NCBI GenBank assembly: GCA_002269645.1
Contig: NIVC01003075.1
Location: 1-64,000 of the forward strand
Length of the DNA: 64,000 nt
Source: Macrostomum lignano
Lineage: Eukaryota
Direction: 5' to 3'
Made by a program: the position numbers and the translations under genes. The notes beneath the pieces are model-generated. The model searched no databases. It was not told the DNA's origin and saw only the letters and a program-made list of their open reading frames with translations. Shown piece after piece: positions 35,101 through 53,631 of the stretch; positions within the stretch are counted from its first letter, which is position 1, and each line of letters begins with the position of its first letter.

Positions 35101-38100
35101 AGGGTCAGTAGGGAGTCACGAGTCCTCAGGGTCAGTAGGGAGTCACGTGTCTTCAGGGTCAGTAGGGAGTCACGTGTCCTCAGGGTCAGGGAGTCACATG
35201 TCCTCAGAGTTAGTAGGGAGTCACGTGTCCTCAGGGTCAGTAGGGAGTCACGTGTCCTCAGAGTCAGTAGGGAGTCACGTGTCTTCAGGGTCAGTAGGGA
35301 GTCACGTGTCTTCAGGGTCAGTAGGGAGTCACGTGTCCTCAGAGTCAGTAGGGAGTCACGTGTCCTCAGAGTCAGTAGGGAGTCACGTGTCCTCAGAGCC
35401 AGTAGGGAGTCACGTGTCCAATGCTTAAACAAGTCATGTAAAATCCAATGCTCAAACTGCTTTACCCAGGACATCTCCACCTTGGAAACGTGCTTGTATC
35501 TGAGAACGGCTGCAAGCTGACAGACCTTGAGAACGGTCTGCTAGGCCTGAGCTGCTCGCTTCGTCAACGAGTTCTGTCGTTGAAACGTCTGAAATCTTTT
35601 GAAGAAATTGACGTTTATTCGTTCGGCCACTGCCTGTACGAAATGGCCACTGGTCAGGTGTTAACTTCGTCCTATGTGGACACGCACTCGCTGACCTGCT
35701 CCACTGATCTGAGTGAGTTGTTGAGTTTTAAGGTTGTTGTTTTTATCATTTTAATTTGTTTTCTTTTCAATTCTTTATCCAATTCCAGAGAATATTATTC
35801 AATCGATTTTAACCGAAGATGCCATTAGATCTGGGATGCCTACAGTTCCAGAACTGTTGGAAAATCCGTAAGTTAAAGATAGTGAAGGTCACTGCCTAAT
35901 CCCGGGGTTGGCAGACTTTTTTACCTCAAGACTCAGATTAAGAATCCTGCTCTTGGCTGCGGGCCAGACGAGAGTGGAAAGATGAGAGAAGATAAGAGAG
36001 AAAAGAGTAAGAGAGGAGAGGCGAGAGATGAAATGGGAGAAGAGACATGAGAGAAAGGAGGGAAAGGGAAGAAAGGAGATGGGAGAGAGGAAGGGGGTAG
36101 AAGAGGGGAGAGGGAAGAGAGAAGAGAGAGGGAAGAGTGGAGAGAGAAGAGGGGAGAGAGGTGAGTCGAGAGATGAGAGGGGAGAGGGGAGAAGAGACAC
36201 AAACATTGAGACCCGAAGGCCAGATAGAGAGGCTTCGCGGGCCGGAGTTAGCCGATCCTGGCCTAATCCGTTGGCTGGGTGGGGTATTTTTATAAAATTA
36301 TTCCGATTCAGAAGCAATCGATTTGGCCCGGCGCATAACGAGGGAAAATGGAACTCCATTTTTATGGCATGATTTCAATAAGCTCAAAAATTCAACAATA
36401 GTTTTGAAAATTGAGAGTCTATGGCAGTGGTTGCTGCTGGCATCCTTCATTGTGCAGATGTCTATGGCCGAAGTATCAACTTGCTTGCCTTGCAGGCAAT
36501 AGTAAGGCAGGGAAGCCTCTATGGTCGCTGCGCTCCCCAGGAAGGGACACTCACCTGCCCCACGCCACTCCGCTATACAAGTTTAGGGGAATGGCATAGA
36601 ATATGAAATGATGCTGCTGCTTATCGATTTCTCGCTAGAGCAGTTTGTACGCGAACTTTTGTAACACCTCTCGTATTTCATAGCTTGCTAACTGGAAAAA
36701 GAATATATACACAGCCGGAGCTTCTCGAAAATGGATCTCTGCAATTCCCCGAAAGTGGACAGCAGCAGAGTTGGAGAAGTTGCGCTGCGATCCAAAGCAC
36801 AACTACCGGATCTGCTCGCTGCATTTTTCGGAAAGGTTCTTTGTAACAAACTCTTAGGACTCCAACTCCAGCCGTAAGCGCTCCGCATTTGCATATGCAG
36901 ATGGACAAGCAAAGAAGCTGAAAAATCGACGCTTGGTTCACTTCTGATGCCGTACCCAGCATCTTTCCAAACGCGCCATCCTACTTCATCGAAACTGTTC
37001 CTGAGAAGCGACCTACCACAATGACATCTGCGCTCAGACTCGGCGAGAGAGTGCCATGCTAGGATGAGGCAGATAGATAGTCAAAACTATCTGAGAAATT
37101 GAGCTAGTAGCTCTGATGTATACTCGTAGTAGACTTTGCTTTTGTTTTATGGAGTCATAAAAAGTGCTATTTTTATACAGCTTGCACCAGCAATTGTCTG
37201 CTCTGTTTGTAAGTTAATTTCACTCTCTTTTGCTTAATTATCACCTAAGGGTAACCATTTCATTTTTATTTCATATGTTTGAATGGCCTGAAGGGTTGTA
37301 AAGTATTTTTTGCGCACTAACAAAACAAGAGTTTTTTGAATAATACAACTTAACCTTGGAGACCTAAAGTTCTCCAAATGTTTTGCGTTGAATAGTGCAA
37401 ACCGCATCTTTCTATGACTTTTAGTTAAAAAGTTATCAATCAAAAAAATGAAAAAACGTTGCATTTTCCTATTCATTTACTGCTTTCCAATTGGGTTTTT
37501 ACCCCTAAACTTGTATGCTGCCTAAACTAGTGTCCCTTCTTAGGGAGCGCAGCGACCATGGAGGCTTCTTTGAGTAAGGAAATGAAGTTCTGTGGCCAGA
37601 ATGCTTAGTTGGAAACTTGGTCTTTTAACCAAAGATGAATTGGGGATTATTTTTTTATACGGAACGCAATGACTCATAAATTTAGTGCTCAAAAATCCCA
37701 ACTCAAGCTTCTTCGCATCCACGCCGGTTCACTATCTGGCCAAGCCGCAGTGGAAGATTGCTGGCAGAGCTAAAGAGGTGCTCACCGCCTACAAGGCTGC
37801 TCAAGAGTTCCGACTGCGAGAGGACCAGCGCCAAGTGAGCCTGGTGAAACGGCGTTCGAGAGCGGCCAACCTTACTGAGGATGAAAGGCGGGCAAGAAGG
37901 ACAGCGAAATTTTCTGTGAGTTCTGTTTTAAAAGCTTTGGTTTGACCAGCTCCTGCAGCTTCCAATAGAAGTTTTCTTTCTATGAATTAAAACGGTTCTC
38001 TTTATTCTTCCGTCTTGTTGCAGTCCGCAGACGGTGATGCTACTAAAGTCAACCGTAAGTGAAAAGCCGAGTACTTCAATATCGATCGGTTTGACCTAGA

Positions 38101-38717
38101 CACCCATCCCAACTCCAATATCAATCGATTAGACTAAGACACCCATTCCAGTCCAATATATCGATCGATTGGATCAAGACACCCATTCTACACCAATATC
38201 AATCGATTAGACCAAGACACCCATCTCAACTCAAATATCGATCGATTAAACTTAGACACCCATTCCACCCCAATATCGATCGATTTGACCAGGACACCCA
38301 TCTCAACTCAAATATCGATCGATCAAACTTAGACACCCATCCCACTCCAATATCGATCGATTGGACAAAGACACCCATTCCACTCCAATATCGATCGATT
38401 TTACAAAGGCATCAATTTCACCCCAATATCGATCGATTGGACCAGGACACCCATTCCACTCCAATATCGATCGATTTGACCAGGACAAATCGTACATTTT
38501 TATTAATACAGCGAGCGCGCAACAGCAGCAGCCGCCTCCTCCTCCTCCGCCTCCTGGTGTCCCACCGCCGCCACCACCGCTGATGCCACCAAGCGGTGAC
38601 CCTGGAGCGGCTGGCGGTGGCCAGGGCCGCGGCGCGCTGCTATCGGATATCGCCGGATTCCGCAAGGACGGCTTAAAGAAGGCCGTCACTAACGATCGCA
38701 GTCAGCCCTCTGTTTAG
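29068..38717 (+). CDS. PXK: PX domain-containing protein kinase-like protein (PX + pseudokinase + Pro-rich + WH2), complete, 542 aa
   Basis: join(29068-29163, 32930-33209, 33694-33771, 33842-33918, 33991-34065, 34156-34260, 34346-34496, 35470-35712, 35789-35867, 37708-37915, 38024-38054, 38512-38717) = 1629 nt, phase-consistent GT-AG. PX motif YRRYNDF..L...LPPKK; pseudokinase GHLHLGNV and LTDLENGLLG (no HRD/DFG); C-terminal WH2 GRGALLSDIAGFRKDGLKK. Confidence 0.95.
29603..31132 (-). mobile_element. Decayed Tc1/mariner (maT/DD37D-like) element in PXK intron 1
   Basis: TA TSDs; TIRs TAGGGTCATTCAGATAAATCTGGAACAA / CAGGGTTGTTTAAATAAATCTAGAACAA; broken transposase pieces (HTH: LFHMGHTPFQISKLLGYPKS; KKPVSVMV..HVMPLHFF; WMPNSLDLNP). 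Confidence 0.85.
30329..30625. mobile_element. MITE with 8-bp TSD (hAT- or P-type) nested in the Tc1/mariner
   Basis: Perfect 14-bp TIR CATACATGCGCAAC; TSD CACCTTCT at 30321-30328 and 30626-30633. Confidence 0.85.
31972..32875 (-). mobile_element. Internally deleted, decayed mariner (DD34D-type)
   Basis: VYGDNAM..SRVFQWHKQF...EDDTRRGRPS joined directly to KGIVH.EFL.QGQTIN; later PYSPNLAPC..LFPKLK; ends approximate. Confidence 0.85.
32930..33209 (+). CDS. PXK: PXK exon 2 (PX domain)
   Basis: EYILKVNRG...WKVYRRYNDF...FLDPDNYCFNYQ. Confidence 0.95.
33265..33615. repeat. 28-bp minisatellite (GGGCCAGCCTCCCAGATCCTCAGTTGCT)n, PXK intron 2
   Basis: Direct reading. Confidence 0.94.
33694..33771 (+). 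CDS. PXK: PXK exon 3
   Basis: ELSLQHVSMVLRSESTFQVLQPCSFMG. Confidence 0.92.
33842..33918 (+). CDS. PXK: PXK exon 4
   Basis: GTRIRKTYFTAESALPTDRNEYLMTW. Confidence 0.92.
33991..34065 (+). CDS. PXK: PXK exon 5
   Basis: VGYGPFCNLDQKDTAAVVSCLTSIS. Confidence 0.9.
34156..34260 (+). CDS. PXK: PXK exon 6
   Basis: HPFIANANICGAVKHGFYCVRQFERHGSVRDLLHK. Confidence 0.92.
34346..34496 (+). CDS. PXK: PXK exon 7
   Basis: AKPKLDCLKKYG...QIQSFGRQILEALKFMHSKGFAY. Confidence 0.94.
34570..35418. repeat. 27-bp minisatellite (AGTAGGGAGTCACGTGTCCTCAGAGTC)n, PXK intron 7
   Basis: Direct reading. Confidence 0.96.
35470..35712 (+). CDS. PXK: PXK exon 8
   Basis: GHLHLGNV...LTDLENGLLGL...IDVYSFGHCLYEMATG...CSTDL. 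Confidence 0.94.
35789..35867 (+). CDS. PXK: PXK exon 9
   Basis: KNIIQSILTEDAIRSGMPTVPELLENP. Confidence 0.9.
35902..36260. mobile_element. hAT (Charlie-like) MITE with GA-rich interior, PXK intron 9
   Basis: 8-bp TSD GCCTAATC (35894-35901, 36261-36268); termini CCGGGGTTGGCAGACT / AGTTAGCCGATCCTG; subterminal GCGGGCC motifs. Confidence 0.8.
36508..37572 (-). mobile_element. P-superfamily-like non-autonomous element, PXK intron 9
   Basis: ~43-bp TIR CA(GG/AA)GAAGCCTCYATGGTCGCTGCGCTCCCYARGAAGGGACAC; 7-bp TSD AGTAAGG (36501-36507, 37573-37579); possible decayed THAP remnants at about 36740-36900. Confidence 0.65.
37708..37915 (+). CDS. PXK: PXK exon 10
   Basis: FFASTPVHYLAKPQWKIAGRAKEVL...RLREDQRQV...EDERRARRTAKFS; acceptor has a weak pyrimidine tract. 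Confidence 0.88.
38024..38054 (+). CDS. PXK: PXK exon 11 (micro-exon)
   Basis: TTGCAG/SADGDATKVN/GTAAGT; required to restore phase into the last exon. Confidence 0.75.
38075..38490. repeat. ~39-bp diverged minisatellite with AATATCGATCG core, PXK intron 11
   Basis: Direct reading. Confidence 0.9.
38512..38717 (+). CDS. PXK: PXK last exon (Pro-rich + WH2)
   Basis: poly-Pro then GRGALLSDIAGFRKDGLKKAVTNDRSQPSV-stop. Confidence 0.93.
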
Positions 38718-39449: not shown

Positions 39450-39915
39450 TGGCCAGCCAAACCCAGCGGGGAGTGGGGTGGGTGCGCGATGGGTCTGAAC
39501 TGCAAAGCGTGGCCAGCCAAACCCAGCGGGAAGTGGGGTGGGTGCGCGCGATGGGTCTGAACTGCAAAGCGTAGCCAGCCAAACCCAGCGAGGAGTGGGG
39601 TGGGTGCGCGATGGGTCTGAACTGCAAAGCGTGGCCAGCCAAACCCAGCGAGGAGTGGGGTGGGTGCGCGCGATGGGTCTGAACTGCAAAGCGTAGCCAG
39701 CCAAACCCAGCGAGGAGTGGGGTGGGTGCGCGATGGGTCTGAACTGCAAAGCGTAGCCAGCCAAACCCAGCGGGGAGTGGGGTGGGTGCGCGATGGGTCT
39801 GAACTGCAAAGCGTAGCCAGCCAAACCCAGCGGGAAGTGGGGTGGGTGCGCGATGGGTCTGAACTGCAAAGCGTAGCCAGCCAAACCCAGCGGGAAGTGG
39901 GGTGGGTGCACGATG
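39450..39915. repeat. 60-bp G-rich minisatellite between the PXK and paralog 3' ends
   Basis: About 8 copies of GGCCAGCCAAACCCAGCGGGGAGTGGGGTGGGTGCGCGATGGGTCTGAACTGCAAAGCGT. Confidence 0.95.
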
Positions 39916-40534
39916 GGTATAAAGTGAATAATAAGGACAGGAATATTTTTATGAAATCAACATTCACTGCAATAATTAATATGGCACATGGCTCCAAATA
40001 TATATATATTAATTAACTATGCATTTAAATAGGTTACTGCTTAATTTAAGCGCATATAACAATAAGACACATGTAGGAAATTATTAACTTGATATACTGC
40101 ATATTAGTGTGGAAATATTTTAAAAGGAATGCATAAAAGCATCGGTAGGTAACAAAGGAACTCTAGATAACAGATAAAATTTAATTACAGGATAGATTTA
40201 GCCAATGGCTAAATTTGCATTTGCACAGAAGTAGATTGCAATTTTATGATTGGTAAAGCACGTGATTATTAACTATAGATGAACAAATATTCAATACATC
40301 GACATTCACAGTGGCATTGTCATGAAAGAAGAAGGCTTTATTCTATATTAGCCAACTGATTACCTTTAAAACGTGAAAGAAGAGAGTAAGATTCTTAGCT
40401 TACGAGTAAAAAAGAAAACACAACAAAGAAGTGTAAAACACGATTCAAAACACAGACACCCCAGATCACCTATATTTATAAATACAAAACATGACTTGCA
40501 GATAAATACATATAACTATATATCGGTCGATTAT

Positions 40535-40792
40535 AACAAGACACCCACTCACTCTAATATCGATCCGATTCGATCGGTTTGACCAAGACACCCACCCCTA
40601 CTTCAATATCGATCGGTTTAGCCAAGACACCCACCCCACTTCAATATCGATCGGTTTAGCCAAGACACCCACCCCACTTCAATATCGATCGGTTTAGCCA
40701 AGACACCCACCCCACTTCAATATCGATCGGTTTAGCCAAGACACCCACCCCACTTCAATATCGATCGGTTTAGCCAAGACACCCACCCCAAC
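40535..40792. repeat. 38-bp minisatellite (AAGACACCCACCCCACTTCAATATCGATCGGTTTAGCC)n
   Basis: Same family as 38075-38490. Confidence 0.93.
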
Positions 40793-40982
40793 TGGGTTTT
40801 GATAAAAATATATTGATTTTATTCCAGACACCCAACCTTAACAATATTATTGATTGGGGCAAGGACAGCCACCTTCACCCCAAACTCAACCGTTAGAAAA
40901 TCTTCGCTAAAGAGGTAGATTAAGAATCTTATCAATAAATATGGTTTGATGAAGGTTCATGCACAACATTAACTAATCAGTT

Positions 40983-43169
40983 TCAGCGGAACACGCCGGT
41001 AACTAAGGGCAGCAGGCCTTCCCTGCCAGGCACAAGCAGCATCTGTCGCAAATTCTCATCCTCCTGAATTCCTTGGCCCAGCCGGCTGCAACAAACGGCT
41101 ACAGAGTCGCAGAGCAGACTGGCTCGTTTAACGTCGATCGCCGCCTCGGCCGTGTTCCGGACGCTGCCAGTACGATAGGCGAGTCTCCAACGCTTCCGAT
41201 AGTTGGTGCACAGAGCGGCTAAGTCGTGCAAAACGGCCAGCGAATGCCGATACTGTCCAAGTCGAAGCCGCTTCGTCACCATGGAAACGCTTAGTGGAAA
41301 ATTCGATTTCCAACTCTTCTGACAACGGCGAGGTCGACGATCGGCTAAGAAAGCGAGGCCGAACAGGCGACGCCAGCAGGGTCGGCGACATTCTTGAAGA
41401 CAGGAGAGCATGCGGTCCAGCAGTAGCGACTCTGAGCGCCGAGATGAGGCAGATTCGGTTGTCGACAAAACGGCAGTCTTTGTCGCGTTGTCTTGGTCCA
41501 ACTGTTTTGAAGTTGGTTGAAATTTATGCGAGATAATTAAGGCAACTGAACTTTAAATATAGGTCATGGTATTCAGAGTTAAAACAGGCAACTTCTCAGA
41601 GATTTATGGAATAGAGACAGACTCAAAGACGGGATAAACAGACTCAAAGACCGGATAAACAGACTCAAAGAGAGGATAAACAGACTCAAAGAGCGGATAA
41701 ACAGACTCAAAGAGCGGATAAACAGACTCAAAGAGAGGATAAACAGACTCAAAGAGCGGATAAACAGACTCAAAGAGAGGATAAACAGACTCAAAGAGCG
41801 GATAAACAGACTCAAAGAGCGGATAAACAGACTCAAAGAGCGGATAAACAGACTCAAAGAGAGGATAAACAGACTCAAAGAGCGGATAAACAGACTCAAA
41901 GAGAGGATAAACAGACTCAAAGAGCGGATAAACAGACTCAAAGAGAGAATAAACAGACTCAAAGAGAGGATAAACAGACTCAAAGAGAGGATAAACAGAC
42001 TCAAAGAGCGGATAAACAGACTCAAAGAGCGTATAAACAGACTCGAAGAGAGGATAAACAGACTCAAAGAGCGTATAAACAGACTCGAAGAGAGGATAAA
42101 CAGACTCAAAGAGCGTATAAACAGACTCGAAGAGTGGATAGTCAGACTTAGAGAGCGGATAAACCGACTCAAGCCTCAAGGAGCGGATAAACAGACCGAA
42201 GCCTCAAGGAGTGGATAAACAGACTACAAGAGCGGATAAACAGACTCAAACACAAATTTCACTAACCGGCAGCATCTCCCACGGGCTGACACGATCCTCG
42301 CCGACTTCATCATCCCACTGAACTCTGACGCAACGCCAGCCGCTGACTAGATTTCGTTTGTCAAAGCCCAGCACTGTGCCAAGTCGGTCAGACTCCGCTT
42401 TACTATTGTTGCCATGACAACAGCGGTAACGACACTTGTCACCAACGTGCCACTGCATTTGCATAGCAGTATTATAGACAGAATGTGGCACAAGAAACTG
42501 TGGCATAGCAAGGCTGCTAGACTCTGTAGAATTACTACCAATCAAAGGCCAGGTGACATCAATAAATTCGGGCACTGTTGATTTAGATTGAGCACAATTT
42601 TCACCGATAATTCTCAGGCGCAGCCGCATCAACCAGTCGGCTGGCTGGTCGGGTTTCCGACATTGGACGTAGCGAATGCCGCGCACTCGGACCACAGCTC
42701 GCTCGGGTCTAACAGCGTCGGGTGCTTCTTCAACAAGTTTACTACTATAAGTAGGAGCAACGAGTTTATGCTTCTGTCGATAATTATTAAACCAGCCGGT
42801 GTGGGCGTCAGCTAAGTAAACAGCCAGATCGCCAACCTGAGGCGTGTAAGGCAATATGGAGGCTGATATAATCCATTGCCTAGGCTGGTCGATTTGGCTT
42901 GAACAGCGATTGGCTGCAGGTAAGATTTTCAATCGAGTCAATTTAACAACTGGTTTTAAATGGAGGAGTTTAGTTAAAGTGCCGGACTGATTGCATTTTT
43001 CAATGCCGTCTGATTTAGCTGGCAATTCGATTCTAGATATGGATTGGCTCTCTAGATCCAGGACAATGCGTTCAAGATTAACAAAGCTGGACAGAGCAGA
43101 CTCAGCAGGTACTGAAGACGGTGAGCAATGTGTCGCGGTTTTGTTCGATTCCAGACGAAGAGCGGCCAT
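40983..43169 (-). CDS. Diverged BRWD/PHIP-derived paralog: Tudor-like region + degenerate bromodomain, no WD40, about 473 aa
   Basis: join(43169-42267, 41501-40983), CCG|GTTAGT...AAACAG|TTG in phase 0. Aligns by eye to the neighbouring BRWD: QWIISASILPYTPQVGDLAVYL vs EWLTSTLPRHSPYVPQIGDEIVYF; QFLV..SVY..AM..QWHVGDK vs DFMV..TYD.AL..NWQVGDR; VQWDD..EDRVSPWE vs AKWDN..EENLSLWD; FPLSVSMVTKRLRLGQYR vs YPIDLSTIRSRLRNMYYR. Confidence 0.82.
41612..42245. repeat. 21-bp minisatellite (GATAAACAGACTCAAAGAGCG)n, paralog intron
   Basis: Direct reading. Confidence 0.96.
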
Positions 43170-43364
43170 GAGACGACGGCTGACAGAAAAGCACAGATAA
43201 TTAGATTGCGCGTGTTCTTATCACAGGTAATTTATTGTAAATAAATTGTTTTTATTACTTTAATTATACCAATACAGCAATTAGTATAATTATTACTCTT
43301 TAGAGATAAGCTTGAGTTAATCTAAAGTGAACGCGAAAATACAAACTACGAAGCTAAAATGAAT

Positions 43365-43640
43365 CGTAATAATAATTGATTACACCTGCGCTAATGAGCA
43401 GATGTGCAACCGACAGCTCAGCCACAGCTGTTCAGTCCAAGGACTGGGGGGTCGCCACACACCCTCAATTATCCCAGCTAATGCTGGCACCCATTTTACA
43501 GCTGGGTGAACTGAAGCAATACAGAGTTAAGTGTCTTCTTGTCTTGCTCAATGACACAAATTGTTCCAGTGGGATCAGGAATCGAACTCCCGACCTTCAA
43601 GTCGTAAGTCCGACGCTCTAACCACTAGGCTAAAAACCCT
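43365..43640 (-). mobile_element. tRNA-derived CORE-type SINE
   Basis: A box TAGCCTAGTGG, B box GAGTTCGATTCC; CORE-like GTGTCATTGAGCAAG..CACTTAACTCT..CAGTTCACCCAGCTGTAAAATGGG; (ATT)n tail. Confidence 0.8.
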
Positions 43641-44961: not shown

Positions 44962-45660
44962 TTATTCCTTATCGACTGCCTCTCACGCCAGCAATGTACA
45001 TCCCCACTGTACATTGCGTATCGATCGCCTCTAAGGCCAGCGATGTGCATTCCCAATGTACATTCCTTATCGACTGCCTCTCACGCCAGCAATGTTCATC
45101 CCCACTGTACATTGCGTATCGATCGCCTCTAAGGCCAGCGATGTGCATTCCCAATGTACATTCCTTATCGACTGCCTCTCACGCCAGCAATGTACATCCC
45201 CACTGTACATTGCTTTTCGATCGCCTCTAAGGCCAGCAATGTGCATTCCCAGTGTACATTCCTTATCGACTGCCTCTCACGCCAGCAATGTACATCCCCA
45301 CTGTACATTGCGTATCGATCGCCTCTAAGGCCAGCGATGTGCATTCCCAATGTACATTCCTTATCGACTGCCTCTCACGCCAGCAATGTTCATCCCCACT
45401 GTACATTGCGTATCGATCGCCTCTAAGGCAAGCAATGTGCATTCCCAGTGTACATTCCTTATCGACTGCCTCTCACGCCAGCAATGTACATCCCCACTGT
45501 ACATTGCGTATCGATCGCCTCTAAGGCCAGCAATGTGCATTCCCAGTGTACATTCCTTATCGACTGCCTCTCTCGCCAGCAATGTGCATTCCCAATGTAC
45601 ATTCCTTATCGACTGCCTCTCACGCCAGCAATGTACATTCCCAATGGCATCGCAATTGCA
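44962..45660. repeat. 98-bp tandem repeat built from two ~49-bp subunits
   Basis: About 7 copies; ORF-track starts are spaced 98 nt apart (45056, 45154, 45252, 45350, 45448). Confidence 0.95.
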
Positions 45661-45822: not shown

Positions 45823-46410
45823 TTAATCTTCATCAGACTTCGCAGACGAGTCGTCGTTACCTTCAGCATCAACCTCGGCAGGTGCTTCATCATCATTAGT
45901 ATCGGCATTATTCTGAATCTCAGAAGCGCCTTCGTCGCTGTCATCGACATTTTCATCGTCTCCTTCTAGCATGGCTCGATAATCTGGTCGATGCCGACGC
46001 AATGGTCGACCGCTGGCAGACTGCTGCTGTTCAGGAGACTGGCGTCGTTGACGCTTCCGTCTGGCTTGTTGACTGTCCTCGTCTTCTAACTGAGCAACCG
46101 GCTGCTGCTGCTGCTGCTCATCCTCCGAGGTGTCCACCATCACAGCTCGTCGAGGTCGTTTTGGCCGAGTAGACGCCGCCACCGCCACCTGATGCCGCTG
46201 GCGTCGAAGTCGACGACGCTCTTGAAGCTGTACACGACGTCTGGTACGCGGATGATGCTTTCGGTCAACTGAGCTGTCCATGTTGGAGTTGTTTGAGTTG
46301 TCATTGTCGGTGCCGTGGTTGCAGCGGTCCCCGGCGCTGTCCATGTCGTTTTCAGCGTCGTGGTCTTCGTCCGAATCATCATCGTCGTCGTCTGATTCGC
46401 AGTAGTTCAC
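45823..46410 (-). CDS. BRWD3: BRWD terminal exon (acidic/basic low complexity)
   Basis: RKRVAQ|VNYCES junction in phase; ends SAKSDED-TAA. Confidence 0.88.
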   Translation of the reverse strand: MNYCESDDDDDDSDEDHDAENDMDSAGDRCNHGTDNDNSNNSNMDSSVDRKHHPRTRRRVQLQERRRLRRQRHQVAVAASTRPKRPRRAVMVDTSEDEQQQQQPVAQLEDEDSQQARRKRQRRQSPEQQQSASGRPLRRHRPDYRAMLEGDDENVDDSDEGASEIQNNADTNDDEAPAEVDAEGNDDSSAKSDED

Positions 46411-47802
46411 CTGGATAGATTTTTTGATGAGCAGGTGAGTCTTACACTGGGTTTGGTTGATTAGTGAAGAGATCATGGGATTGGGAAGTTGAATTGTGGG
46501 ACTGGGAAATGGGATCATGGGATTAGGAAATGGGATCATGGGATTGAGAAATGGGATCATGGGATTGAGAAATGGGATCATGGGATTGGGAAATGGGATC
46601 ATGGGATTGGGAAGTTGAATTGTGGGACTGGGAAATGGGATCATGGGATTGGGAAATGGGATCATGGGATTGGGAAATGGGATCATGAGATTGAGAAATG
46701 GGATCATGGGATTGAGAAATGGGATCATGGGATTGGGAAATGGGATCATGGGATTGAGAAATGGGATCATGGGATTGGGAAGTGGGATCATGGGATTGGG
46801 AAGTGGGATCATGGGATTGAGAAATGGGATCATGGGATTGAGAAATGGGATCATGGGACTGGGAATTGGGATCATGGGACTTGGTAATGGGGATTATTGG
46901 ACTCTTATATAGGAAATTAGACGCAGGAAAGAAAAACAATAAAATCCCACCTGGGCAACTCGCTTCCTGAGTCCGCCGCCGCCGCTTCCCAATCCAGCCG
47001 AGGACGACGAGGAAGCCGCAGCCGATCTGCCTCGATTCGGTGCCGCAGTGGCTTTCTTTCGCAAATTCTGCTGCTGCTGTTGCTGCTGTTGCTGCTGCCG
47101 ATCCCGCTGAAGATTTCGTTTGCCAACCGTCGGAGCTGCAACCGACTCAACTGACGCCTGTTTTCGTTTCCGTTCTCTAATTCTAGAGCGTCTCTGCTGC
47201 TGCTGCGGCTGCTGACGCCTGGTTGGTCTACATCTGGCACCAGATGCACCACCTGTGGAGGCGGCGGCAGCAGCGGCGCCAGCCGAGCCGTCGAGACCGC
47301 GCGCTCGCAATCGGCGCCATCGTTTCAAAGCGCCGCTCATTAGTCGTTCAAATTCCCGTTGCAGGCTCAGCGTCATCTGATAAATTCTCGAAGTTGGCAC
47401 AGTATTGTAGGCCCGAGAGTTGCTAAACATTCTCTGTAGATCGCGGAAAAAATCCAACGGACTTGCGTAGCAACCGTTGCTAAGGCGTTGCCGGGCTGTG
47501 CTTAAATCGATGGGATCGGAGACCACGTCTAAATAGTCTGGATAGGCTTCCAGATCCACTGGCTGCTGGAAGGGCAGGGACTCGTCTCGCTGGGTGAGCT
47601 TGGCCAGCACCCGGTAGCACAACCGGGTCCACAGGGGCGGCCCATCCGCTGGGAGCGATGATGAAGCTTCGGGATCGGCGTCCGGCTGCTGCTCCTCCTG
47701 ATGAGGCTGACCGGCGGCAACCTGAGCAGTGGAAATATTAAAGGATAAGAAATATAAGGTTTGGGCCCATCCTATCTGCCTGACCCAGCGCCAGACATAG
47801 CC

Positions 47803-47876
<74 letters not shown>

Positions 47877-47900
47877 ACAGACAGACAGACAGACAGACAC

Positions 47901-47987
<87 letters not shown>

Positions 47988-48046
47988 GGCAGGCAGGCAG
48001 GAAGGCAGGCAGGCAGGCAGGCAGACAGGCAGACAGACACACAGAC

Positions 48047-48110
<64 letters not shown>

Positions 48111-51100
48111 TGACAGACAGACAGACAGACAGACAGACAGGCAATCTATCAAACCGCCACTCACATCTGCATCGCTGGAAATTCTCTTCCGCTTCCTGGG
48201 CACAGCCTCCGCAGCCTCATCCTCCTCGTCCTCATCAGCCGAGGCCGAATCGCCTTCGCTCTCAATCGAAGCGTCACCTTCGCTACCGTCGCCGCTGCCA
48301 CCCTCAGCATCCGGCGGTTCCTCTTCCTCATCGTCTTCAAACTCGCTCAAATGCAATCCGTTGCGATGCTCCTCATCCAGGCTATCCAGCATCTCTCGAT
48401 GGAGCTGGCCAATATCCGAGCAGTCGGTCTTGCTAATAAACTCCAACAGCAGATCGGTGAGCAGCCGGGCTCGCCTAACAATCACGGTGTCGGCCTCATT
48501 AAAGTACTCGGCATTGTTAGCTAGAAATCGAACATCGTATTGCACAGACAATAGCCGACGATAGTACATGTTCCTTAGGCGGCTCCGGATGGTGCTCAAA
48601 TCGATTGGATAGGCAATCATAAATCCGTAGGTTGGATACAGTTCCAAGTCTACTGGCTTGGCGAACTCAGCGAATACGGGCAGGTCGATTAGGTAGTCGA
48701 GGGCGGCGGCTAGTCTGGCACAATCGGCTGGTCGACCGTCGGGGTGAGGCCATTCGCGCGGACATGGGGTGTACTGGAGGCTGGCGAATTCCGCGGCGGT
48801 GACGGGCCGGTTCTCGGCGGCTTCCGCTTCCGAGCTGGAAATTCATTGTTGGTATTATTGTTATTTGTAATTTTATTATTACTCGTACTAACCTAAGGTC
48901 ATAGACAGAGGTCCATAAGAAGGTCATAGACGCTTATAAGTGGGTCATAGACTGACGCTCAAAAGAAGGCCATAGACAGACGCTCATAAGTGGGTCATAG
49001 ACACACGCTCATAAGAAGGTCATAGATAGACGCTCATAAGAAGGTCATAGACAGACGCTCATAAGAAGGTCATAGACAGACGCTCATAAGTGGGTTATAG
49101 ACAGACGCTCATAAGTGGGTTATAGACAGACGCTCATAGTGGTCATAGACAGACGCTCATAGTGGTCATAGACAGACGCTCATAAGTGGGTTATAGACAG
49201 ACGCTCATAAGTGGGTCATAGACAGACGCTCATAAGTGGGTCATAGACAGACGCTAATGAGTGGATTATAGACAAACGCTCATAAGTGGGTCATAGACAG
49301 ACGCTCATAAGTGGGTCATAGACAGACGCTAATGAGTGGATTATAGACAGACGCTCATTAGTGGGTCATAGACAGACGCTCATAAGGTTATAGACAGATG
49401 CTCATAAGTGAGTCATAGACAGACGTTCATAAGAGGATCATATAGGGCCATAGAGAACTACTCACCCATCCTCTCCAACATTTAGCGGATGCAGATCCCA
49501 CAGACTCAAGTTCTCCTCACTGCCATCGTTATCCCATTTAGCTCGAACGCTGAGCCAATGAGATTCCGGGAACGCTGCATCGTGAGCCGCTATGCCCACA
49601 ATGGTTCCCGACCACCAATAGTCGTCGATAATGGCCCGAAATCGATCTCCAACCTGCCAGTTTCGCTCCAACGCTCGATCGTAAGTCTGACGCAGGACCA
49701 TAAAATCCAGCACGTTGTCCATGTCGTGAAAGCGTAATTGAAATTTGCCTCGAGAGCCGTCAGCGAATGCCAGTGTCATTTGTACTAAGCGAGGCGATTT
49801 TGTTAACAAAGGCTTCATACCGGACACTTTCATTTGCTCGTGTGGCGACAGGTCGGGCATGCGTAGCCAGGGCAGTTCGCGGTCAACTTTGTAGGCATCG
49901 ATAGCCTGATAGAAAAATTTTTGTATGATTTATGACCCATGGTTTTGCTGACGTTTTAAGTGGGAATTTATATTAATGTATTTTGTAACCGACAGTTAAC
50001 TAGCAACATTCGCCTGAATCCATGCTAAACCACTCGTTCCCTCTACCTATATCGCATCGATCTCTATCCCATTTATCTCTATTAAATCTATCTACCATCT
50101 AATCCATCTCCATCTGATCCATTTCTGTCCCATCCATCTCTCCCATCCATCTCTATCCCATCTAACTCTATCCCATCCATATCTATCCCATCAACGTCTA
50201 TCCCATCCATATCTATCCCATCAACGTCTATCCCATCAACGTCTATCCCATCCATCTCTATCTCATCAATCTCTATCCCAGCCATCTCTATCCCAGTCAT
50301 CTCTATCCCATCTATCTCTATCCCAGTCATCTCTATCCCATCTATCTCTATCCCATCCATCTCTATTCCATCCAACTCTATCCCATCCAACTCTATCCCA
50401 TCTAAATCTATCCCATCCAACTCTATCCCATCCAACTCTATCCCATCTAAATCTATCCCATCCAACTCTATCCCATCCAACTCTATCCCATCCAACTCTA
50501 TCCCATCCAACTCTATCCCATCCAACTCTATCCCATCCAACTCTATCCCATCCAACTCTATCCCATCCAACTCTATCCCAGAATTAACTATATCACCCAT
50601 CTCCATTCAAACGTTTCTAGAACATTCTATGCATCTATTTTATCTTTAAATAACCCTCATCTAGCAATCATATATGCTTATATTTACCTGCTATCGACAA
50701 CCTTCGACACGTAAACACATATTCTCACCTGGACGCTATCAATGTACTGCTGATGGCCCTGCCTAAAGTACACAATCTCGTCGCCAATCTGCGGCACGTA
50801 GGGACTGTGCCTGGGCAGCGTAGAGGTCAGCCATTCGGGCGGCCGGTAGTCGTCAGACAGCTTCAGTTTACGCCGACTTTGATGCTGCAGCTGCTGGTGA
50901 TACTGATAGGAAGGACCGGCCATAGACGATGACGGGGCGGCGTCGGCGTCTGCTCTGACCGCGGGACGACGAGACGACGACCGAGTCGGTTTCGATGTTG
51001 TAGCCTTTGAAGTTGCCGGCATTGACGTTGCCTTGCTACTGGAACGATTGTTATTGGTTGAATTGGCTAATATTGAACGCTTGGACTGCTTTGGCGGGCG

Positions 51101-51292
51101 GCCACGGCGTCTGGGCGAGGGCGAGTTGGCGACGACCGGCGACTGCAAACAGGGCGAGAAGGCGAGAGAGCGATTAAAGCAACGATTTTTTAATTAAAAT
51201 TCCAATTCGCTTATGCTACTTAGAAGTAGCTTAATAGTAAATAAAACCTTTTTTGACATTTCGATTCGCTAAAAAAGCTAAGCAACTAACTG

Positions 51293-51343
<51 letters not shown>

Positions 51344-51368
51344 GACTAACTAACTAACTAACTAACTG

Positions 51369-51423
<55 letters not shown>

Positions 51424-51496
51424 GACTAACTAACTAACTAACTAACTGACTAACTAACTAACTGACTAACTAACTAACTGACTAACTAACTAACTG

Positions 51497-51539
<43 letters not shown>

Positions 51540-51609
51540 GACTAACTGACTGACTAACTAACTAACTAACTAACTGACTAACTAACTAACTGACTAACTG
51601 ACTAACTAT

Positions 51610-51664
<55 letters not shown>

Positions 51665-51665
51665 C

Positions 51666-51747
<82 letters not shown>

Positions 51748-51849
51748 GACTAACTATCTAACTAACTAACTAACTAACTGACTAACTGACTGACTAACTA
51801 ACTAACTAACTAACTGACTAACTAACTAACTGACTAACTGACTAACTAT

Positions 51850-51887
<38 letters not shown>

Positions 51888-51900
51888 GACTAACTAACTG

Positions 51901-51957
<57 letters not shown>

Positions 51958-51997
51958 CTAACTAACTAACTGACTAACTAACTGACTAACTAACTAT

Positions 51998-52043
<46 letters not shown>

Positions 52044-52113
52044 GACTAACTGACTGACTAACTAACTAACTAACTAACTGACTAACTAACTAACTGACTA
52101 ACTGACTAACTAT

Positions 52114-52163
<50 letters not shown>

Positions 52164-52176
52164 GACTAACTAACTG

Positions 52177-52225
<49 letters not shown>

Positions 52226-52265
52226 CTAACTAACTATCTGACTAACTAACTGACTAACTAACTAT

Positions 52266-52327
<62 letters not shown>

Positions 52328-52397
52328 GACTAACTGACTGACTAACTAACTAACTAACTAACTGACTAACTAACTAACTGACTAACTGACTAACTAT

Positions 52398-52445
<48 letters not shown>

Positions 52446-52460
52446 CTGACTAACTAACTG

Positions 52461-52497
<37 letters not shown>

Positions 52498-52537
52498 CTA
52501 ACTAACTAACTGACTAACTAACTGACTAACTAACTAT

Positions 52538-52575
<38 letters not shown>

Positions 52576-52620
52576 GACTAACTATCTAACTAACTAACTA
52601 ACTAACTGACTAACTGACTG

Positions 52621-52655
<35 letters not shown>

Positions 52656-52704
52656 GACTAACTGACTAACTATCTAACTAACTAACTAACTAACTAACTA
52701 ACTG

Positions 52705-52737
<33 letters not shown>

Positions 52738-52901
52738 CTAACTAACTAATTAACTAACTAACTAACTAACTAACTAATTAACTAACTAACTAACTAACTG
52801 ACTAACTATCTAACTAACTAACTAACTAACTGACTAACTGACTGACTAACTAACTAACTAACTAACTGACTAACTAACTAACTGACTAACTGACTAACTA
52901 T

Positions 52902-52951
<50 letters not shown>

Positions 52952-52964
52952 GACTAACTAACTG

Positions 52965-53009
<45 letters not shown>

Positions 53010-53049
53010 CTAACTAACTAACTGACTAACTAACTGACTAACTAACTAT

Positions 53050-53091
<42 letters not shown>

Positions 53092-53136
53092 GACTAACTA
53101 TCTAACTAACTAACTAACTAACTGACTAACTGACTG

Positions 53137-53175
<39 letters not shown>

Positions 53176-53193
53176 GACTAACTGACTAACTAT

Positions 53194-53227
<34 letters not shown>

Positions 53228-53236
53228 GACTAACTG

Positions 53237-53267
<31 letters not shown>

Positions 53268-53276
53268 GACTAACTG

Positions 53277-53355
<79 letters not shown>

Positions 53356-53364
53356 GACTGACTG

Positions 53365-53411
<47 letters not shown>

Positions 53412-53596: not shown

Positions 53597-53631
<35 letters not shown>

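What the first reader, a model, noticed from the sequence alone, without database searches (positions are those of the whole stretch)
40983..43179. Free-standing BRWD-derived gene: Tudor-like module plus a bromodomain lacking the acetyl-lysine Asn, in tandem behind its parent
Seen: two long open exons (301 + 172 codons) with phase-matched GT-AG ends, 2.6 kb downstream of the BRWD stop and in the same orientation. They align only to the Tudor region and bromodomain 1 of BRWD. There is no WD40 and no second bromodomain, and a new ~95-aa N-terminus is present. The bromodomain segment NNAEYFN reads CTNYRKRW, so the conserved Kac-binding Asn is gone. The aromatic DYWW of the Tudor region is replaced by CCHGNNSK. 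Intron positions differ from the parent, and the paralog keeps SPWE where the neighbour has SLWD. Established: the BC-loop Asn is needed for bromodomain Kac binding, and the PHIP/BRWD cryptic Tudor reads methylated H3K4. Inference: intact ORFs despite this much divergence imply an old, selected gene. It could be a reader-dead decoy, an adaptor, or a neofunctionalised (e.g. germline) chromatin factor. I know of no described family with this architecture.
Basis: partly seen in the sequence, partly recalled or inferred. Interest (0 to 1): 0.8.

Follow-up and report, generated by a model that had tools for sequence, protein, structure and literature searches.

The report
Truncated, divergent BRWD paralog in flatworm
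Next to the full-length BRWD/PHIP chromatin-reader gene of the flatworm Macrostomum lignano sits a real, transcribed 473-aa gene that keeps only BRWD's Tudor-like module and a badly eroded first bromodomain, apparently without the usual histone-mark pockets; this is a modestly interesting lineage-specific offshoot, not a new kind of system.

Summary
The window is Macrostomum lignano contig NIVC01003075.1. The two exons (43169-42267 and 41501-40983, minus strand, GT/AG, phase 0) give a 473-aa protein identical to GenBank PAA53517.1 (Mlig025752.g1, "hypothetical protein"), whose model comes from RNA-seq. A second genomic copy has the same structure and neighbours.

Profile comparison with BRWD Tudor-BD1 gives probability 99.2%, E 2e-19. 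Pfam ARF_AD passes its cut-off. Foldseek finds the ARF DD-AD fold first and bromodomains weakly. There is no WD40 domain and no second bromodomain (BD2).

The Trp equivalent to PHIP W1081 is replaced by a longer, non-aromatic loop. The bromodomain-like part keeps only the alphaA-alphaB signature, has lost the PVD and YPxY motifs, and has become very basic (net +16). Loss of the acetyl-lysine Asn is likely but depends on the alignment.

An open frame of 473 codons at about 26% identity argues for selection (P about 1e-9). No orthologs were found, and dN/dS between the two copies (0.32, 5 nonsynonymous to 5 synonymous) is underpowered.

Best reading: a lineage-restricted partial duplicate that works as a scaffold without canonical histone reading. 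Its function is untested. It is a new variant of a known family, of moderate interest.

The parts
40983..43181 (-). Whole gene as annotated in GenBank (BOX15_Mlig025752g1, PAA53517.1; 5'-partial CDS of 477 aa, or 473 aa from the first ATG)
   Evidence: The protein is 100% identical, and the record range 40983-43181 of NIVC01003075.1 matches the window coordinates.
43180..43195 (-). Pyrimidine tract plus AG (ctgtgcttttctgtcAG) directly at the 5' end of the transcript model. It is a candidate spliced-leader trans-splice acceptor.
   Evidence: Sequence. The annotated CDS starts here. 38.8% of M. lignano genes are trans-spliced, and gene boundaries were set from trans-splice reads (PMC5730564). 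Trans-splicing of this particular gene is inferred, not shown.
42885..43169 (-). N-terminal ~95 aa with no detectable homology, predicted disordered
   Evidence: AF2 pLDDT is 22-34 over residues 1-111. hhalign homology starts at residue 91 in P0001 numbering. There is no significant DNA or protein similarity to the parent's linker.
42267..42884 (-). Double Tudor-like module (BRWD/PHIP cryptic Tudor, equivalent to the ARF DD-AD fold), aa 96-301, in a single exon
   Evidence: hhalign probability 99.2%, E 2e-19. tblastn with an insect BRWD3-like protein gives E 1.4e-12 over 238 columns. Foldseek finds the ARF DNA-binding domain structures 6sdg and 4ldy at E 9e-6 and 2e-5.
42267..42497 (-). Second Tudor barrel (ARF_AD / BRWD_AD match), aa 225-301
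   Evidence: Pfam PF06507 scores 37.3 bits (cut-off 27), E 2.6e-9. PF25313 scores 29.4 bits (cut-off 40). PDB ARF sequences match at E 6.6e-5.
42378..42422 (-). Loop CCHGNNSKAESDRLG (aa 250-264) replacing the DDxWW methyl-lysine cage loop. It has no aromatic residue, is 7 residues longer than in BRWD, and has an ARF-like length.
   Evidence: Alignment. The spacing from the first Trp of WW to the BD1 Asn is 158 residues in five BRWDs, which equals 1239 minus 1081 in human PHIP. W1081A abolishes H3K4me binding (PMC5710144).
41502..42266 (-). The gene's only intron (GT..AG), 83% of which is a 21-bp minisatellite (41617-42250, 29.5 copies)
   Evidence: The intron is 702 nt in the sister copy because of a different repeat number.
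40983..41501 (-). Exon 2, aa 302-473 plus the stop codon (40983-40985)
   Evidence: There are 0 differences in 519 nt between the two genomic copies.
41073..41435 (-). Bromodomain-1-derived helical module (aa 324-444). pI 10.6, net charge +16, 8 Cys.
   Evidence: AF2 helices at 323-343, 346-352, 377-385, 392-416 and 419-444, with pLDDT 62-78. Foldseek finds bromodomains at TM 0.5-0.66, E 0.15-0.3.
41199..41309 (-). The only clearly conserved bromodomain stretch: KSNFPLSVSMVTKRLRLGQYRHSLAVLHDLAALCTNY (alphaA to alphaB)
   Evidence: The BRWD BD1 HMM scores 18.5 bits, against a maximum of 6.6 in 2000 shuffles. hhalign gives E 2.3e-4 for exon 2 alone. Pfam Bromodomain gives only 12 bits, E 0.22.
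41295..41351 (-). ZA-loop equivalent FLADRRPRRCQKSWKSNFP. It has the same length as the parent's loop, but PVD becomes ADR and YPTY becomes RCQK, and it is strongly basic.
   Evidence: Read directly from the sequence and the ungapped comparison with the parent.
41187..41213 (-). LCTNYRKRW, where the parent has LANNAEYFN. Trp sits at the ungapped position of the acetyl-lysine Asn. The alternative Asn417 lies 11 residues further on (41154-41156).
40818..40823 (-). AATAAA, a candidate poly(A) signal 160 nt after the stop codon
   Evidence: Sequence. Usage was not tested.
45823..51142 (-). Context: the C-terminal part of the neighbouring full-length BRWD gene. Tudor exons lie at 51142-50729 and 49905-49466. 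The BD1 exon starts at 48834 (Asn codon 48500-48498). BD2 lies around 47631-47317. The stop codon is at 45825-45823.
   Evidence: WD40 exons lie further upstream (63079-62867, 58337-58050).

Best explanation
Shown:
- This is Mlig025752, a real, spliced, transcribed protein-coding gene of Macrostomum lignano. It lies head-to-tail 2.6 kb behind the full-length BRWD/PHIP gene.
- It belongs to the BRWD/PHIP lineage but keeps only that family's chromatin-binding core. The order is a disordered ~95-aa N-terminus, then the double Tudor-like 'cryptic Tudor', then a strongly eroded bromodomain-1-like helical module.
- It has no WD40 propeller and no second bromodomain.

Inferred from family knowledge:
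- Without WD40 it cannot act as a DDB1-CUL4 substrate receptor.
- The Trp equivalent to PHIP W1081 is replaced by a longer polar loop, the same solution seen in plant ARF ancillary domains. The bromodomain ZA and BC pocket motifs are replaced by Arg/Lys-rich sequence. It therefore most likely no longer reads H3K4me or H3K14ac.

Inferred origin:
- A DNA-level partial tandem duplication of the 3' half of BRWD produced it.
- Rapid divergence followed, while the reading frame stayed under selection.
- Expression was probably made easy by a splice acceptor that can take a spliced leader.

Speculative mechanism:
- It works as a non-enzymatic scaffold or adaptor.
- The conserved Tudor-like fold serves as a structural or protein-binding platform. 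The newly basic helical module (net +16) may contact nucleic acid or acidic surfaces.
- In this view it is a 'pseudo-reader' rather than a competitor for histone marks.
For: - Identity and transcription: the model is 100% identical to PAA53517.1. The GenBank annotation of Mlig_3_7 derives only from RNA-seq assemblies, with boundaries set from trans-splice and poly(A) reads (PMC5730564). A second collinear copy has the same two-exon structure and the same neighbours, BRWD upstream and a PX-kinase-WH2 gene downstream.
- Homology: hhalign against BRWD Tudor-BD1 gives probability 99.2%, E 2e-19, over residues 91-408. Pfam ARF_AD scores above its cut-off. phmmer against 1.84 billion representatives returns only BRWD and ARF proteins, with alignments running from the Tudor into BD1. 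The BD1 HMM scores 18.5 bits, with 0 of 2000 shuffles reaching it.
- Fold: AF2 with a BRWD alignment gives Tudor strands and a four- to five-helix C-terminal module at pLDDT 60-83. Foldseek finds the ARF DD-AD fold at E about 1e-5, and bromodomains at TM 0.5-0.66.
- Lost sites: the loop alignment and the 158-residue spacing that maps W1081. The paralog has no PDB bromodomain hit even at E<=10, against 302 hits at E<=0.001 for the parent. Net charge is +16 against -3 for the parent's BD1.
- Selection: 0 stops observed against about 20 expected, P about 1.4e-9. pN between the two copies is 0.0046, the same as for the parent's exons.
- Precedent: the ARF DD-AD fold derives from a PHIP cTudor and functions without its hydrophobic cage (PMC11685440).
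Against: - No ortholog was found in any other species, so long-term conservation is not demonstrated.
- dN/dS between the two copies is 0.32 on only 10 substitutions, which is not significantly below 1 (binomial P 0.07).
- The AF2 model has low overall confidence (mean pLDDT 52). It was guided by a BRWD alignment, so recovering a bromodomain-like bundle is partly circular. The single-sequence model is uninformative.
- An alternative alignment keeps an Asn at the BC-loop position. PHIP BD2 shows that non-Asn bromodomains can still bind acetyl-lysine (PMC8653789).
- The high Arg content could simply follow the high GC content of exon 2 (57%).
- No expression pattern, localisation or binding data were found.
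Confidence: 0.6

Rival explanations
1. The protein is still a histone-mark reader, but a non-canonical one. The Tudor-like barrel and/or the bromodomain-like bundle bind methyl- or acetyl-lysine (or another acyl or methyl mark) through different residues. It would then compete with full-length BRWD on chromatin as a WD40-less decoy or dominant negative.
For: - The structural core residues of the second Tudor barrel are kept: F in QFLV, W in QW, VQWDD and SPWE.
- A Smith-Waterman alignment places Asn417 exactly six residues before the conserved helix-C motif, as in the parent.
- PHIP BD2 binds H4K12ac with Thr in place of Asn (PMC8653789).
- Mammals produce a WD40-less short PHIP isoform (PMC7267775).
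Against: - The residue equivalent to W1081, whose mutation alone abolishes H3K4me binding, is absent, and its loop has been rebuilt.
- The PVD and YPxY pocket motifs of the ZA loop are replaced by ADR and RCQK at unchanged loop length.
- Pfam Bromodomain scores only 12 bits, and no PDB bromodomain is detectable by sequence.
Confidence: 0.15
2. It is a transcribed evolutionary relic: a partial duplicate with no selected function. It is kept open by chance or by recent gene conversion and is on its way to decay.
For: - It is restricted to one species in all the data available.
- Both ligand pockets are degenerate.
- dN/dS between the copies is not significantly below 1.
- M. lignano carries massive recent duplication: 180-312 Mb of the assembly is duplicated (PMC5730564).
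- One UniRef copy changes the conserved Trp of PRQW to Gln.
Against: - About 26% identity to every BRWD means many substitutions per site, yet 473 codons stay open. About 20 stops would be expected (P about 1e-9), and the other five frames are full of stops.
- The fold-defining residues and the alphaA-alphaB signature are retained.
- All five known copies are intact over the region they cover.
- Exon 2 has 0 differences in 519 nt between the copies, while the flanks differ by 1.1-2.9%.
Confidence: 0.1
3. It is not an independent gene but a downstream cassette of the BRWD transcription unit. Either it is cis-spliced onto BRWD's WD40 exons as an alternative Tudor/BD module, or it is made only from a BRWD read-through polycistronic precursor.
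For: - It has the same orientation as BRWD and lies only 2.6 kb behind the BRWD stop codon.
- The transcript model begins exactly at a 3' splice acceptor, and its frame is open to its 5' end, which is why the CDS is flagged 5'-partial.
- About 7% of M. lignano transcripts are polycistronic precursors (PMC5730564).
Against: - The RNA-seq-based annotation separates the two genes in both genomic copies.
- A good ATG lies 10 nt after the acceptor.
- The in-frame upstream sequence has stops before the acceptor.
- BRWD has its own stop codon, with an ATTAAA about 85 nt downstream of it.
- A polycistronic precursor resolved by trans-splicing would still yield the free-standing protein described here.
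Confidence: 0.08

Closest known systems
BRWD/PHIP family (human PHIP/BRWD2, BRWD1, BRWD3; Drosophila BRWD3), which are CRL4 substrate receptors with a Tudor-BD1-BD2 trivalent reader
   Same: The cryptic double Tudor followed by BD1 is homologous and collinear (hhalign E 2e-19). Motifs such as PY(x)PQ(x)GD, (D)F(x)V, W(x)(x)GD, WD(D/N) and SPW(D/E) are kept. The gene sits next to the genome's full-length BRWD.
   Different: It has no WD40 propellers, no BD2 and no long C-terminal tail. The W1081-equivalent Trp is lost and the BD1 pocket motifs are lost. Identity to any BRWD is only about 26%. It is a small 473-aa basic protein (pI 9.5).
Short (104 kDa) PHIP isoform of mammals, which lacks the WD40 repeats (Farhang-Fallah 2000 and Podcheko 2007, as cited in PMC7267775)
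   Same: It is a WD40-less product of the same family that cannot serve as a CRL4 receptor.
   Different: The mammalian form is an isoform of the same gene with intact bromodomains. Here it is a separate, highly diverged gene with degenerate reader sites and only one bromodomain-like module.
Plant Auxin Response Factor DD-AD scaffold (Pfam ARF_AD PF06507; PDB 4ldx, 6sdg)
   Same: It is the best Pfam, PDB-sequence and Foldseek match. The beta1-beta2 loop is lengthened and non-aromatic where BRWD has WW. ARF is a documented case of a PHIP cTudor being co-opted as a scaffold whose hydrophobic cage is dispensable (PMC11685440).
   Different: It has no B3 DNA-binding insertion, no PB1 domain and no dimerisation helix. 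It comes from an animal, and its likeness to ARF loops is convergent or due to relaxed constraint, not shared ancestry within ARFs. It also carries a bromodomain remnant, which ARFs lack.
Atypical bromodomains without the BC-loop Asn (for example PHIP BD2, with Thr1396)
   Same: The canonical Asn is probably absent.
   Different: PHIP BD2 keeps a recognisable bromodomain sequence and binds H4K12ac (PMC8653789). The module here fails the Pfam cut-off, has lost the ZA-loop motifs as well, and is highly basic.

Membership tests
BRWD/PHIP family | N-terminal WD40 beta-propellers (the DDB1-CUL4 docking part) | tested here: not met
   Pfam finds no WD40 hit in the 473-aa protein. Homology to BRWD starts at the Tudor. 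The neighbouring gene does have WD40 exons.
BRWD/PHIP family | Cryptic double Tudor immediately upstream of the bromodomains | tested here: met
   hhalign probability 99.2%, E 2e-19. tblastn with a BRWD3-like protein gives E 1.4e-12. Foldseek matches the ARF DD-AD fold at E 9e-6.
BRWD/PHIP family | BD1, a canonical class VII bromodomain | tested here: inconclusive
   Homology of the alphaA-alphaB stretch is beyond chance (18.5 bits, 0 of 2000 shuffles). However, Pfam gives 12 bits against a cut-off of 21.7. The paralog has no PDB bromodomain sequence hit, against 302 for the parent.
BRWD/PHIP family | Second bromodomain (BD2) | tested here: not met
   The protein ends about 30 residues after the BD1-like module.
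Methyl-lysine-reading Tudor (PHIP cTudor type) | Aromatic cage Trp equivalent to PHIP W1081 | tested here: not met
   BRWD DDxWWxG aligns with GNNSKAE..SDRLG, which has no aromatic residue. The mapping of W1081 rests on the conserved 158-residue spacing to the BD1 Asn, so it is an inference.
Pfam ARF_AD (PF06507) / BRWD_AD (PF25313) domain | Score above the curated gathering cut-off | tested here: met
   ARF_AD scores 37.3 bits against a cut-off of 27. BRWD_AD scores 29.4 bits against 40, so it is not met in my scan, although it is listed among the precomputed hits.
Bromodomain (PF00439) | BC-loop Asn, plus the ZA-loop PVD motif and conserved Tyr that form the acetyl-lysine pocket | tested here: inconclusive
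   The ZA motifs are clearly replaced (ADR and RCQK) at equal loop length. The Asn column holds Trp in the ungapped alignment, but Asn417 fits if helix B carries an 11-residue insertion.
Bromodomain (PF00439) | Left-handed four-helix bundle | tested here: inconclusive
   AF2 helices have pLDDT 62-78, and Foldseek finds bromodomains at TM 0.5-0.66 but E 0.15-0.3. The model was guided by a BRWD alignment, and the single-sequence model is poor.
Auxin Response Factor family | B3 DNA-binding domain inserted in the DD, plus a C-terminal PB1 domain | tested here: not met
   Pfam finds no B3 or PB1 hit. The organism is a flatworm.
Expressed protein-coding gene | Transcript with the predicted splice junction, and an ORF maintained beyond chance | tested here: met
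   The GenBank CDS is identical to the model, and that annotation is RNA-seq-derived. There are 0 stops against about 20 expected. This is indirect evidence: I could not inspect reads.

The most novel reading that the evidence does not exclude
An animal counterpart of the event that created plant ARFs. A fragment of the BRWD/PHIP reader (cTudor plus a bromodomain remnant) was cut loose from its ubiquitin-ligase half, lost both histone-mark pockets and was re-purposed. Its newly Arg/Lys-rich helical module would act as a nucleic-acid- or nucleosome-surface-binding element. The result would be a selected, lineage-specific 'pseudo-reader' chromatin factor in a regenerating flatworm. Its birth may have been eased by spliced-leader trans-splicing, which can turn an internal exon acceptor into a gene start.
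Probability: 0.2. Interest if true: 0.6.

Novelty: new variant of a known kind. Interest (0 to 1): 0.4.

Why it matters
If the protein is functional, it is a natural separation-of-function experiment on the BRWD/PHIP family. The chromatin-binding region exists here without the CRL4-docking WD40 half and without the canonical H3K4me and Kac pockets. It would show what the cTudor-bromodomain fold can do apart from reading marks. That would parallel the plant ARF scaffold, whose ancillary domain is essential for a still unknown reason.

It is also a clean example of how partial tandem duplicates may become genes in a trans-splicing genome.

M. lignano has working RNAi, in situ hybridisation and transgenesis, so the question can be tested. 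If the gene has no phenotype and no orthologs, it is just one of many young duplicates in a highly duplicated genome.

Tried and rejected
- Ortholog search. The word-indexed search of 5.8 billion proteins returned only the gene's own 90% cluster. The exhaustive phmmer of 1.84 billion representatives returned 10 other hits. P0006 (E 3e-26) is a spurious match to a repetitive, low-complexity assembly artefact. The rest are plant ARFs or ordinary BRWDs.
- P0012 looked like a possible intermediate (SPWEILP, first Trp lost). Its contig L003 shows an ordinary BRWD exon with a canonical NARAYN BD1, closer to the parent than to the paralog. I rejected it as an ortholog.
- The collections for related loci cover viruses, metagenomes and prokaryote genomes only. 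Other Macrostomum genomes could not be searched.
- Expression data. 'Mlig025752' occurs in no paper text and in none of the held supplements of PMC5816591 or PMC5730564.
Look-ups of the 477-aa forms found only the two GenBank contigs and no transcript contigs.
- Single-sequence AF2 was uninformative, with pLDDT 38.6.
- No solved PHIP/BRWD Tudor structure exists in the PDB copy, so comparison with PHIP Tudor-BD1 was possible only through the ARF structures.
- The test for residual similarity between the paralog's N-terminus and the parent's linker was negative at both DNA and protein level.
- The test of whether the paralog is specifically closer to its neighbour than to other BRWDs was negative.
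- ARAGORN found no tRNA in the window.
Full report
**What the window is.** A search with the 473-aa conceptual product returned one cluster at 100% identity. It is GenBank PAA53517.1, 'hypothetical protein BOX15_Mlig025752g1, partial [Macrostomum lignano]'. The gene sits at 40983-43181 of contig NIVC01003075.1 (121 kb, assembly GCA_002269645.1, Mlig_3_7). The window coordinates therefore equal the contig coordinates. The organism is a free-living flatworm with a repeat-rich, heavily duplicated genome (PMC5730564).

**Check of the observation.**
- On the minus strand an ATG at 43169 opens 301 codons that end at a CCG|GTTAGT donor (42267/42266).
- After a 765-nt intron, an aaaacag|TTG acceptor opens 172 more codons and a TGA (41501-40983).
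- Both junctions are phase 0.
- The spliced product is exactly the GenBank protein, apart from four extra residues (SRRL) that GenBank adds because the transcript's frame is open to its 5' end.
- The BRWD stop codon is at 45823-45825, 2.64 kb upstream on the same strand.

**Is it a gene?** According to the genome paper, the GenBank annotation of Mlig_3_7 contains only transcripts assembled from RNA-seq. Gene boundaries were set from trans-splice and poly(A) reads. The splice junction and the separation from BRWD thus rest on RNA evidence, although I could not inspect the reads.
- A second genomic copy (PAA51489.1 on NIVC01003421.1, locus L001) is collinear over more than 20 kb. It has BRWD upstream, the same two-exon gene, and a convergent PX/kinase-like/WH2 gene downstream.
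- Three further near-identical UniRef models exist.
- Composition-matched shuffles of the CDS carry on average 20.4 stop codons, and none of 20,000 shuffles had zero (Poisson P about 1.4e-9). The other five frames of the exons carry 2-32 stops each.
- Since the protein is only about 26% identical to any BRWD, an open frame of this length implies selection on the ORF during most of its divergence.
- Direct tests are weak. The two copies differ at 10 CDS positions, 5 synonymous and 5 nonsynonymous, all in exon 1. That gives dN/dS 0.32 (binomial P 0.07 against neutrality).
- For comparison, the parent's C-terminal exons show 22 synonymous and 8 nonsynonymous differences (0.11). pN is the same in both genes, 0.0046.
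- Exon 2 shows 0 differences in 519 nt, while the flanks differ by 1.1-2.9%.

**Homology.**
- Within the window the protein matches only the neighbour's Tudor exons (E 3e-6 and 0.012) and, weakly, BD1.
- An insect BRWD3-like protein aligns to exon 1 over 238 columns at E 1.4e-12.
- Against an alignment of eleven BRWD Tudor-BD1 segments, hhalign gives probability 99.2%, E 2e-19. It covers 281 columns and runs collinearly from residue 91 to residue 408, from the PPEW motif through both Tudor barrels into helix B of BD1.
- Pfam reports ARF_AD above its gathering score (37.3 bits against 27), BRWD_AD below it (29.4 against 40) and Bromodomain at only 12 bits (E 0.22).
- Exon 2 alone scores E 2.3e-4 by hhalign.
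- Exon 2 also scores 18.5 bits against a BD1-only HMM, while the best of 2000 shuffles reaches 6.6 bits. The recognisable part is 37 residues: KSNFPLSVSMVTKRLRLGQYRHSLAVLHDLAALCTNY against vveYPidlstikarlenkfYrriesllfDvrylasna.
- The parent's BD1 hits 302 distinct PDB bromodomain sequences. The paralog hits none, even at E<=10.
- No WD40 domain and no second bromodomain are present.

**Structure.**
- AlphaFold2 with a 19-row alignment (paralog copies plus BRWD homologs) gives mean pLDDT 52.
- Residues 1-111 are disordered.
- Residues 119-305 form Tudor-like strands with pLDDT 57-83.
- Helices at 323-343, 346-352, 377-385, 392-416 and 419-444 have pLDDT 62-78, which is the Z / ZA / A / B / C order of a bromodomain.
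- Foldseek against the PDB puts the ARF DNA-binding domains first (6sdg at E 8.7e-6, 4ldy at E 2.4e-5). SAWADEE and KOW barrels follow, then many bromodomains (SMARCA2/4, ATAD2, PB1) at target TM 0.5-0.66 but E 0.15-0.3.
- No PHIP/BRWD Tudor structure is in the PDB, so ARF is the expected structural proxy. The ARF DD-AD fold has been shown to derive from a PHIP cTudor (PMC11685440).
- Because the alignment that guided the model consists of BRWDs, the bromodomain-like bundle is supportive but not independent evidence. The single-sequence model is poor.

**Ligand sites.**
- In PHIP, W1081A abolishes H3K4me binding and N1239A abolishes H3K14ac binding (PMC5710144, PMC8653789).
- In five animal BRWDs the first Trp of the DDxWW motif lies exactly 158 residues before the BD1 Asn, which equals 1239 minus 1081. 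W1081 is therefore that Trp; this is an inference.
- At that place the paralog has GNNSKAE..SDRLG. It contains no aromatic residue and is seven residues longer. Its length matches plant ARFs (EGEECPE..QRLAG), where the cage is blocked and dispensable.
- The rest of the barrel signature is kept: F of QFLV, W of QW, VQWDD and SPWE.
- In the bromodomain part, the ZA loop has the same length as in the parent. However, PVD reads ADR and YPTY reads RCQK.
- Where the parent has LANNAEYFN the paralog has LCTNYRKRW. In the ungapped reading Trp replaces the Asn.
- A Smith-Waterman alignment instead inserts 11 residues in helix B and aligns Asn417 (SVRN|TAEAAIDVKRASLL) with the parent's YFN|EADTVIVRRARLL. 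AF2 does predict longer B and C helices. The Asn loss is therefore probable but alignment-dependent.
- The module has become very basic. K+R is 24 and D+E is 8, for a net charge of +16 and pI 10.6. The parent's BD1 has net -3, and other BRWD BD1s range from -1 to +2. The module also holds 8 Cys against 2.

**Origin.**
- The parent splits the Tudor between two exons (51142-50729 and 49905-49466). It has a phase-2 intron seven codons after the last Tudor strand.
- The paralog lacks the first of these introns. Its only intron is in phase 0, directly after SPWEMLP. This fits a DNA-level partial duplication followed by one intron loss and a shifted boundary better than it fits retroposition, but it is not proof.
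- The paralog's transcript starts at a 3' splice acceptor (ttttctgtcAG). The distance from that acceptor to the conserved Trp codon is 304 nt, against 309 nt from the parent's exon acceptor. The 'new' N-terminus may therefore be the diverged counterpart of the parent's disordered linker.
- No residual sequence similarity supports that idea.
- The paralog is no closer to its neighbour than to amoebozoan or insect BRWDs. Tandem position is the only evidence for descent from this particular gene.
- The duplication predates the split of the two genomic copies, because both copies carry the gene.

**Most likely mechanism, and its rivals.**
- Shown: a transcribed, ORF-maintained, WD40-less, BD2-less BRWD offshoot with a conserved Tudor-like fold and a degenerate BD1.
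- Inferred: it cannot recruit CRL4, and it probably does not read H3K4me or H3K14ac.
- Speculative: it acts as a scaffold or adaptor whose basic helical module contacts nucleic acid or acidic surfaces.
- Rival 1 (0.15): a non-canonical reader or decoy.
- Rival 2 (0.10): a transcribed relic with no selected function.
- Rival 3 (0.08): a cassette of the BRWD transcription unit rather than an independent gene.
- The tests that would separate these are listed under the next steps.

**Comparison with what is known, and verdict.**
- The gene belongs to the BRWD/PHIP lineage by descent. It fails the family's architectural definition: WD40 and BD2 are absent and BD1 is inconclusive.
- It is not an ARF, because it has no B3 and no PB1 domain.
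- The nearest functional analogies are the WD40-less short PHIP isoform (PMC7267775) and the ARF co-option of the cTudor as a cage-independent scaffold.
- I found no description of such a stand-alone cTudor/pseudo-bromodomain gene in the literature. It is, however, already deposited as a hypothetical protein with the Tudor-like Pfam hits.
- Truncated duplicates are common in this highly duplicated genome, and nothing is yet known about this one's expression or function.
- I rate it a new variant of a known kind, with moderate interest (0.4).

Noticed in passing
window 41617-42250, 44964-45646, 46471-46891, 47802-48140, 48897-49442, 50050-50580, 51284-53739, 54100-54377, 55009-56000: Almost every intron and intergenic stretch around BRWD and the paralog is dominated by one long, regular micro- or minisatellite, each with a different unit. 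Examples are 21 bp x29.5 in the paralog's intron, 98 bp x7, (CAGA)85, 25 bp x22, 15 bp x35, and a 2.4-kb (AACT)n tract. Copy numbers differ between the two genomic copies, for instance a 765-nt versus a 702-nt intron.
   Followed up: partly
window 43570-43639 (- strand): A tRNA-like sequence about 400 nt upstream of the paralog's start, on the same strand. It scores 27.3 bits for Rfam tRNA, just under the gathering score of 29, and ARAGORN does not call it. With the conserved-looking tail that follows (to about 43440), it looks like the head of a tRNA-derived SINE. It is present in both genomic copies.
   Followed up: partly
window ~32100-38400 (+ strand); L001 14776-22136: The convergent downstream gene has a PX domain (32894-33328, E 1.5e-16), a kinase-like region and a WH2 motif, which is a PXK-like architecture. 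Its introns also hold long tandem arrays (for example 34524-35540).
   Followed up: partly
window 30712-31041 and 32290-32634 (- strand): Open frames that resemble DNA-transposase N-terminal helix-turn-helix regions. The first gives a weak hit to the Sleeping Beauty HTH domain (E 0.001, below cut-off). The second has no credible Pfam hit. They are probably decayed Tc1/mariner-type fragments.
   Followed up: partly
L002 1-7359 versus L001 1-7597: The annotated BRWD product is 1192 aa on this contig but 1943 aa on the sister contig. The C-terminal exons I compared are intact and 96-99% identical in both. The difference may be a transcript-model artefact, or a real difference further upstream.
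   Followed up: no
window 51142->50833 versus 43179->42875: The distance from the exon-start splice acceptor to the conserved Trp codon (PPEW / PRQW) is 309 nt in the parent's Tudor exon and 304 nt in the paralog's exon 1. This suggests that the paralog's gene start is the old internal exon boundary. No residual sequence similarity backs this up.
   Followed up: yes
window 38073-38487, 40570-40790, 39452-39918: Related 38-bp units (…AGACACCCA[C/T][C/T]CCAC…ATCGATCG…) form arrays at two places downstream of the paralog. A GC-rich 60-bp array lies between them. Together they create long spurious ORFs on both strands.
   Followed up: no
L003 348-1088 (ENA ERZ25069267 contig ctg9879): A BRWD gene from an unidentified eukaryote in a metagenome assembly has DDQCW instead of DDxWW, so the first cage Trp is lost, while its BD1 stays canonical (NARAYN). 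This shows that the W1081 position is not invariant in full-length BRWDs.
   Followed up: partly
proteins P0003-P0005 (UniRef A0A1I8HT91, A0A1I8INX6, A0A1I8IT30): The WormBase/UniRef models of the same gene are named 'DUF1618 domain-containing protein', and all stop at residue 389 (…GQYRHSL), in the middle of the bromodomain-like module. My Pfam scan shows no DUF1618 hit. The name and the truncation look like annotation artefacts. One copy carries 8 amino-acid changes, including the conserved Trp of PRQW changed to Gln.
   Followed up: no
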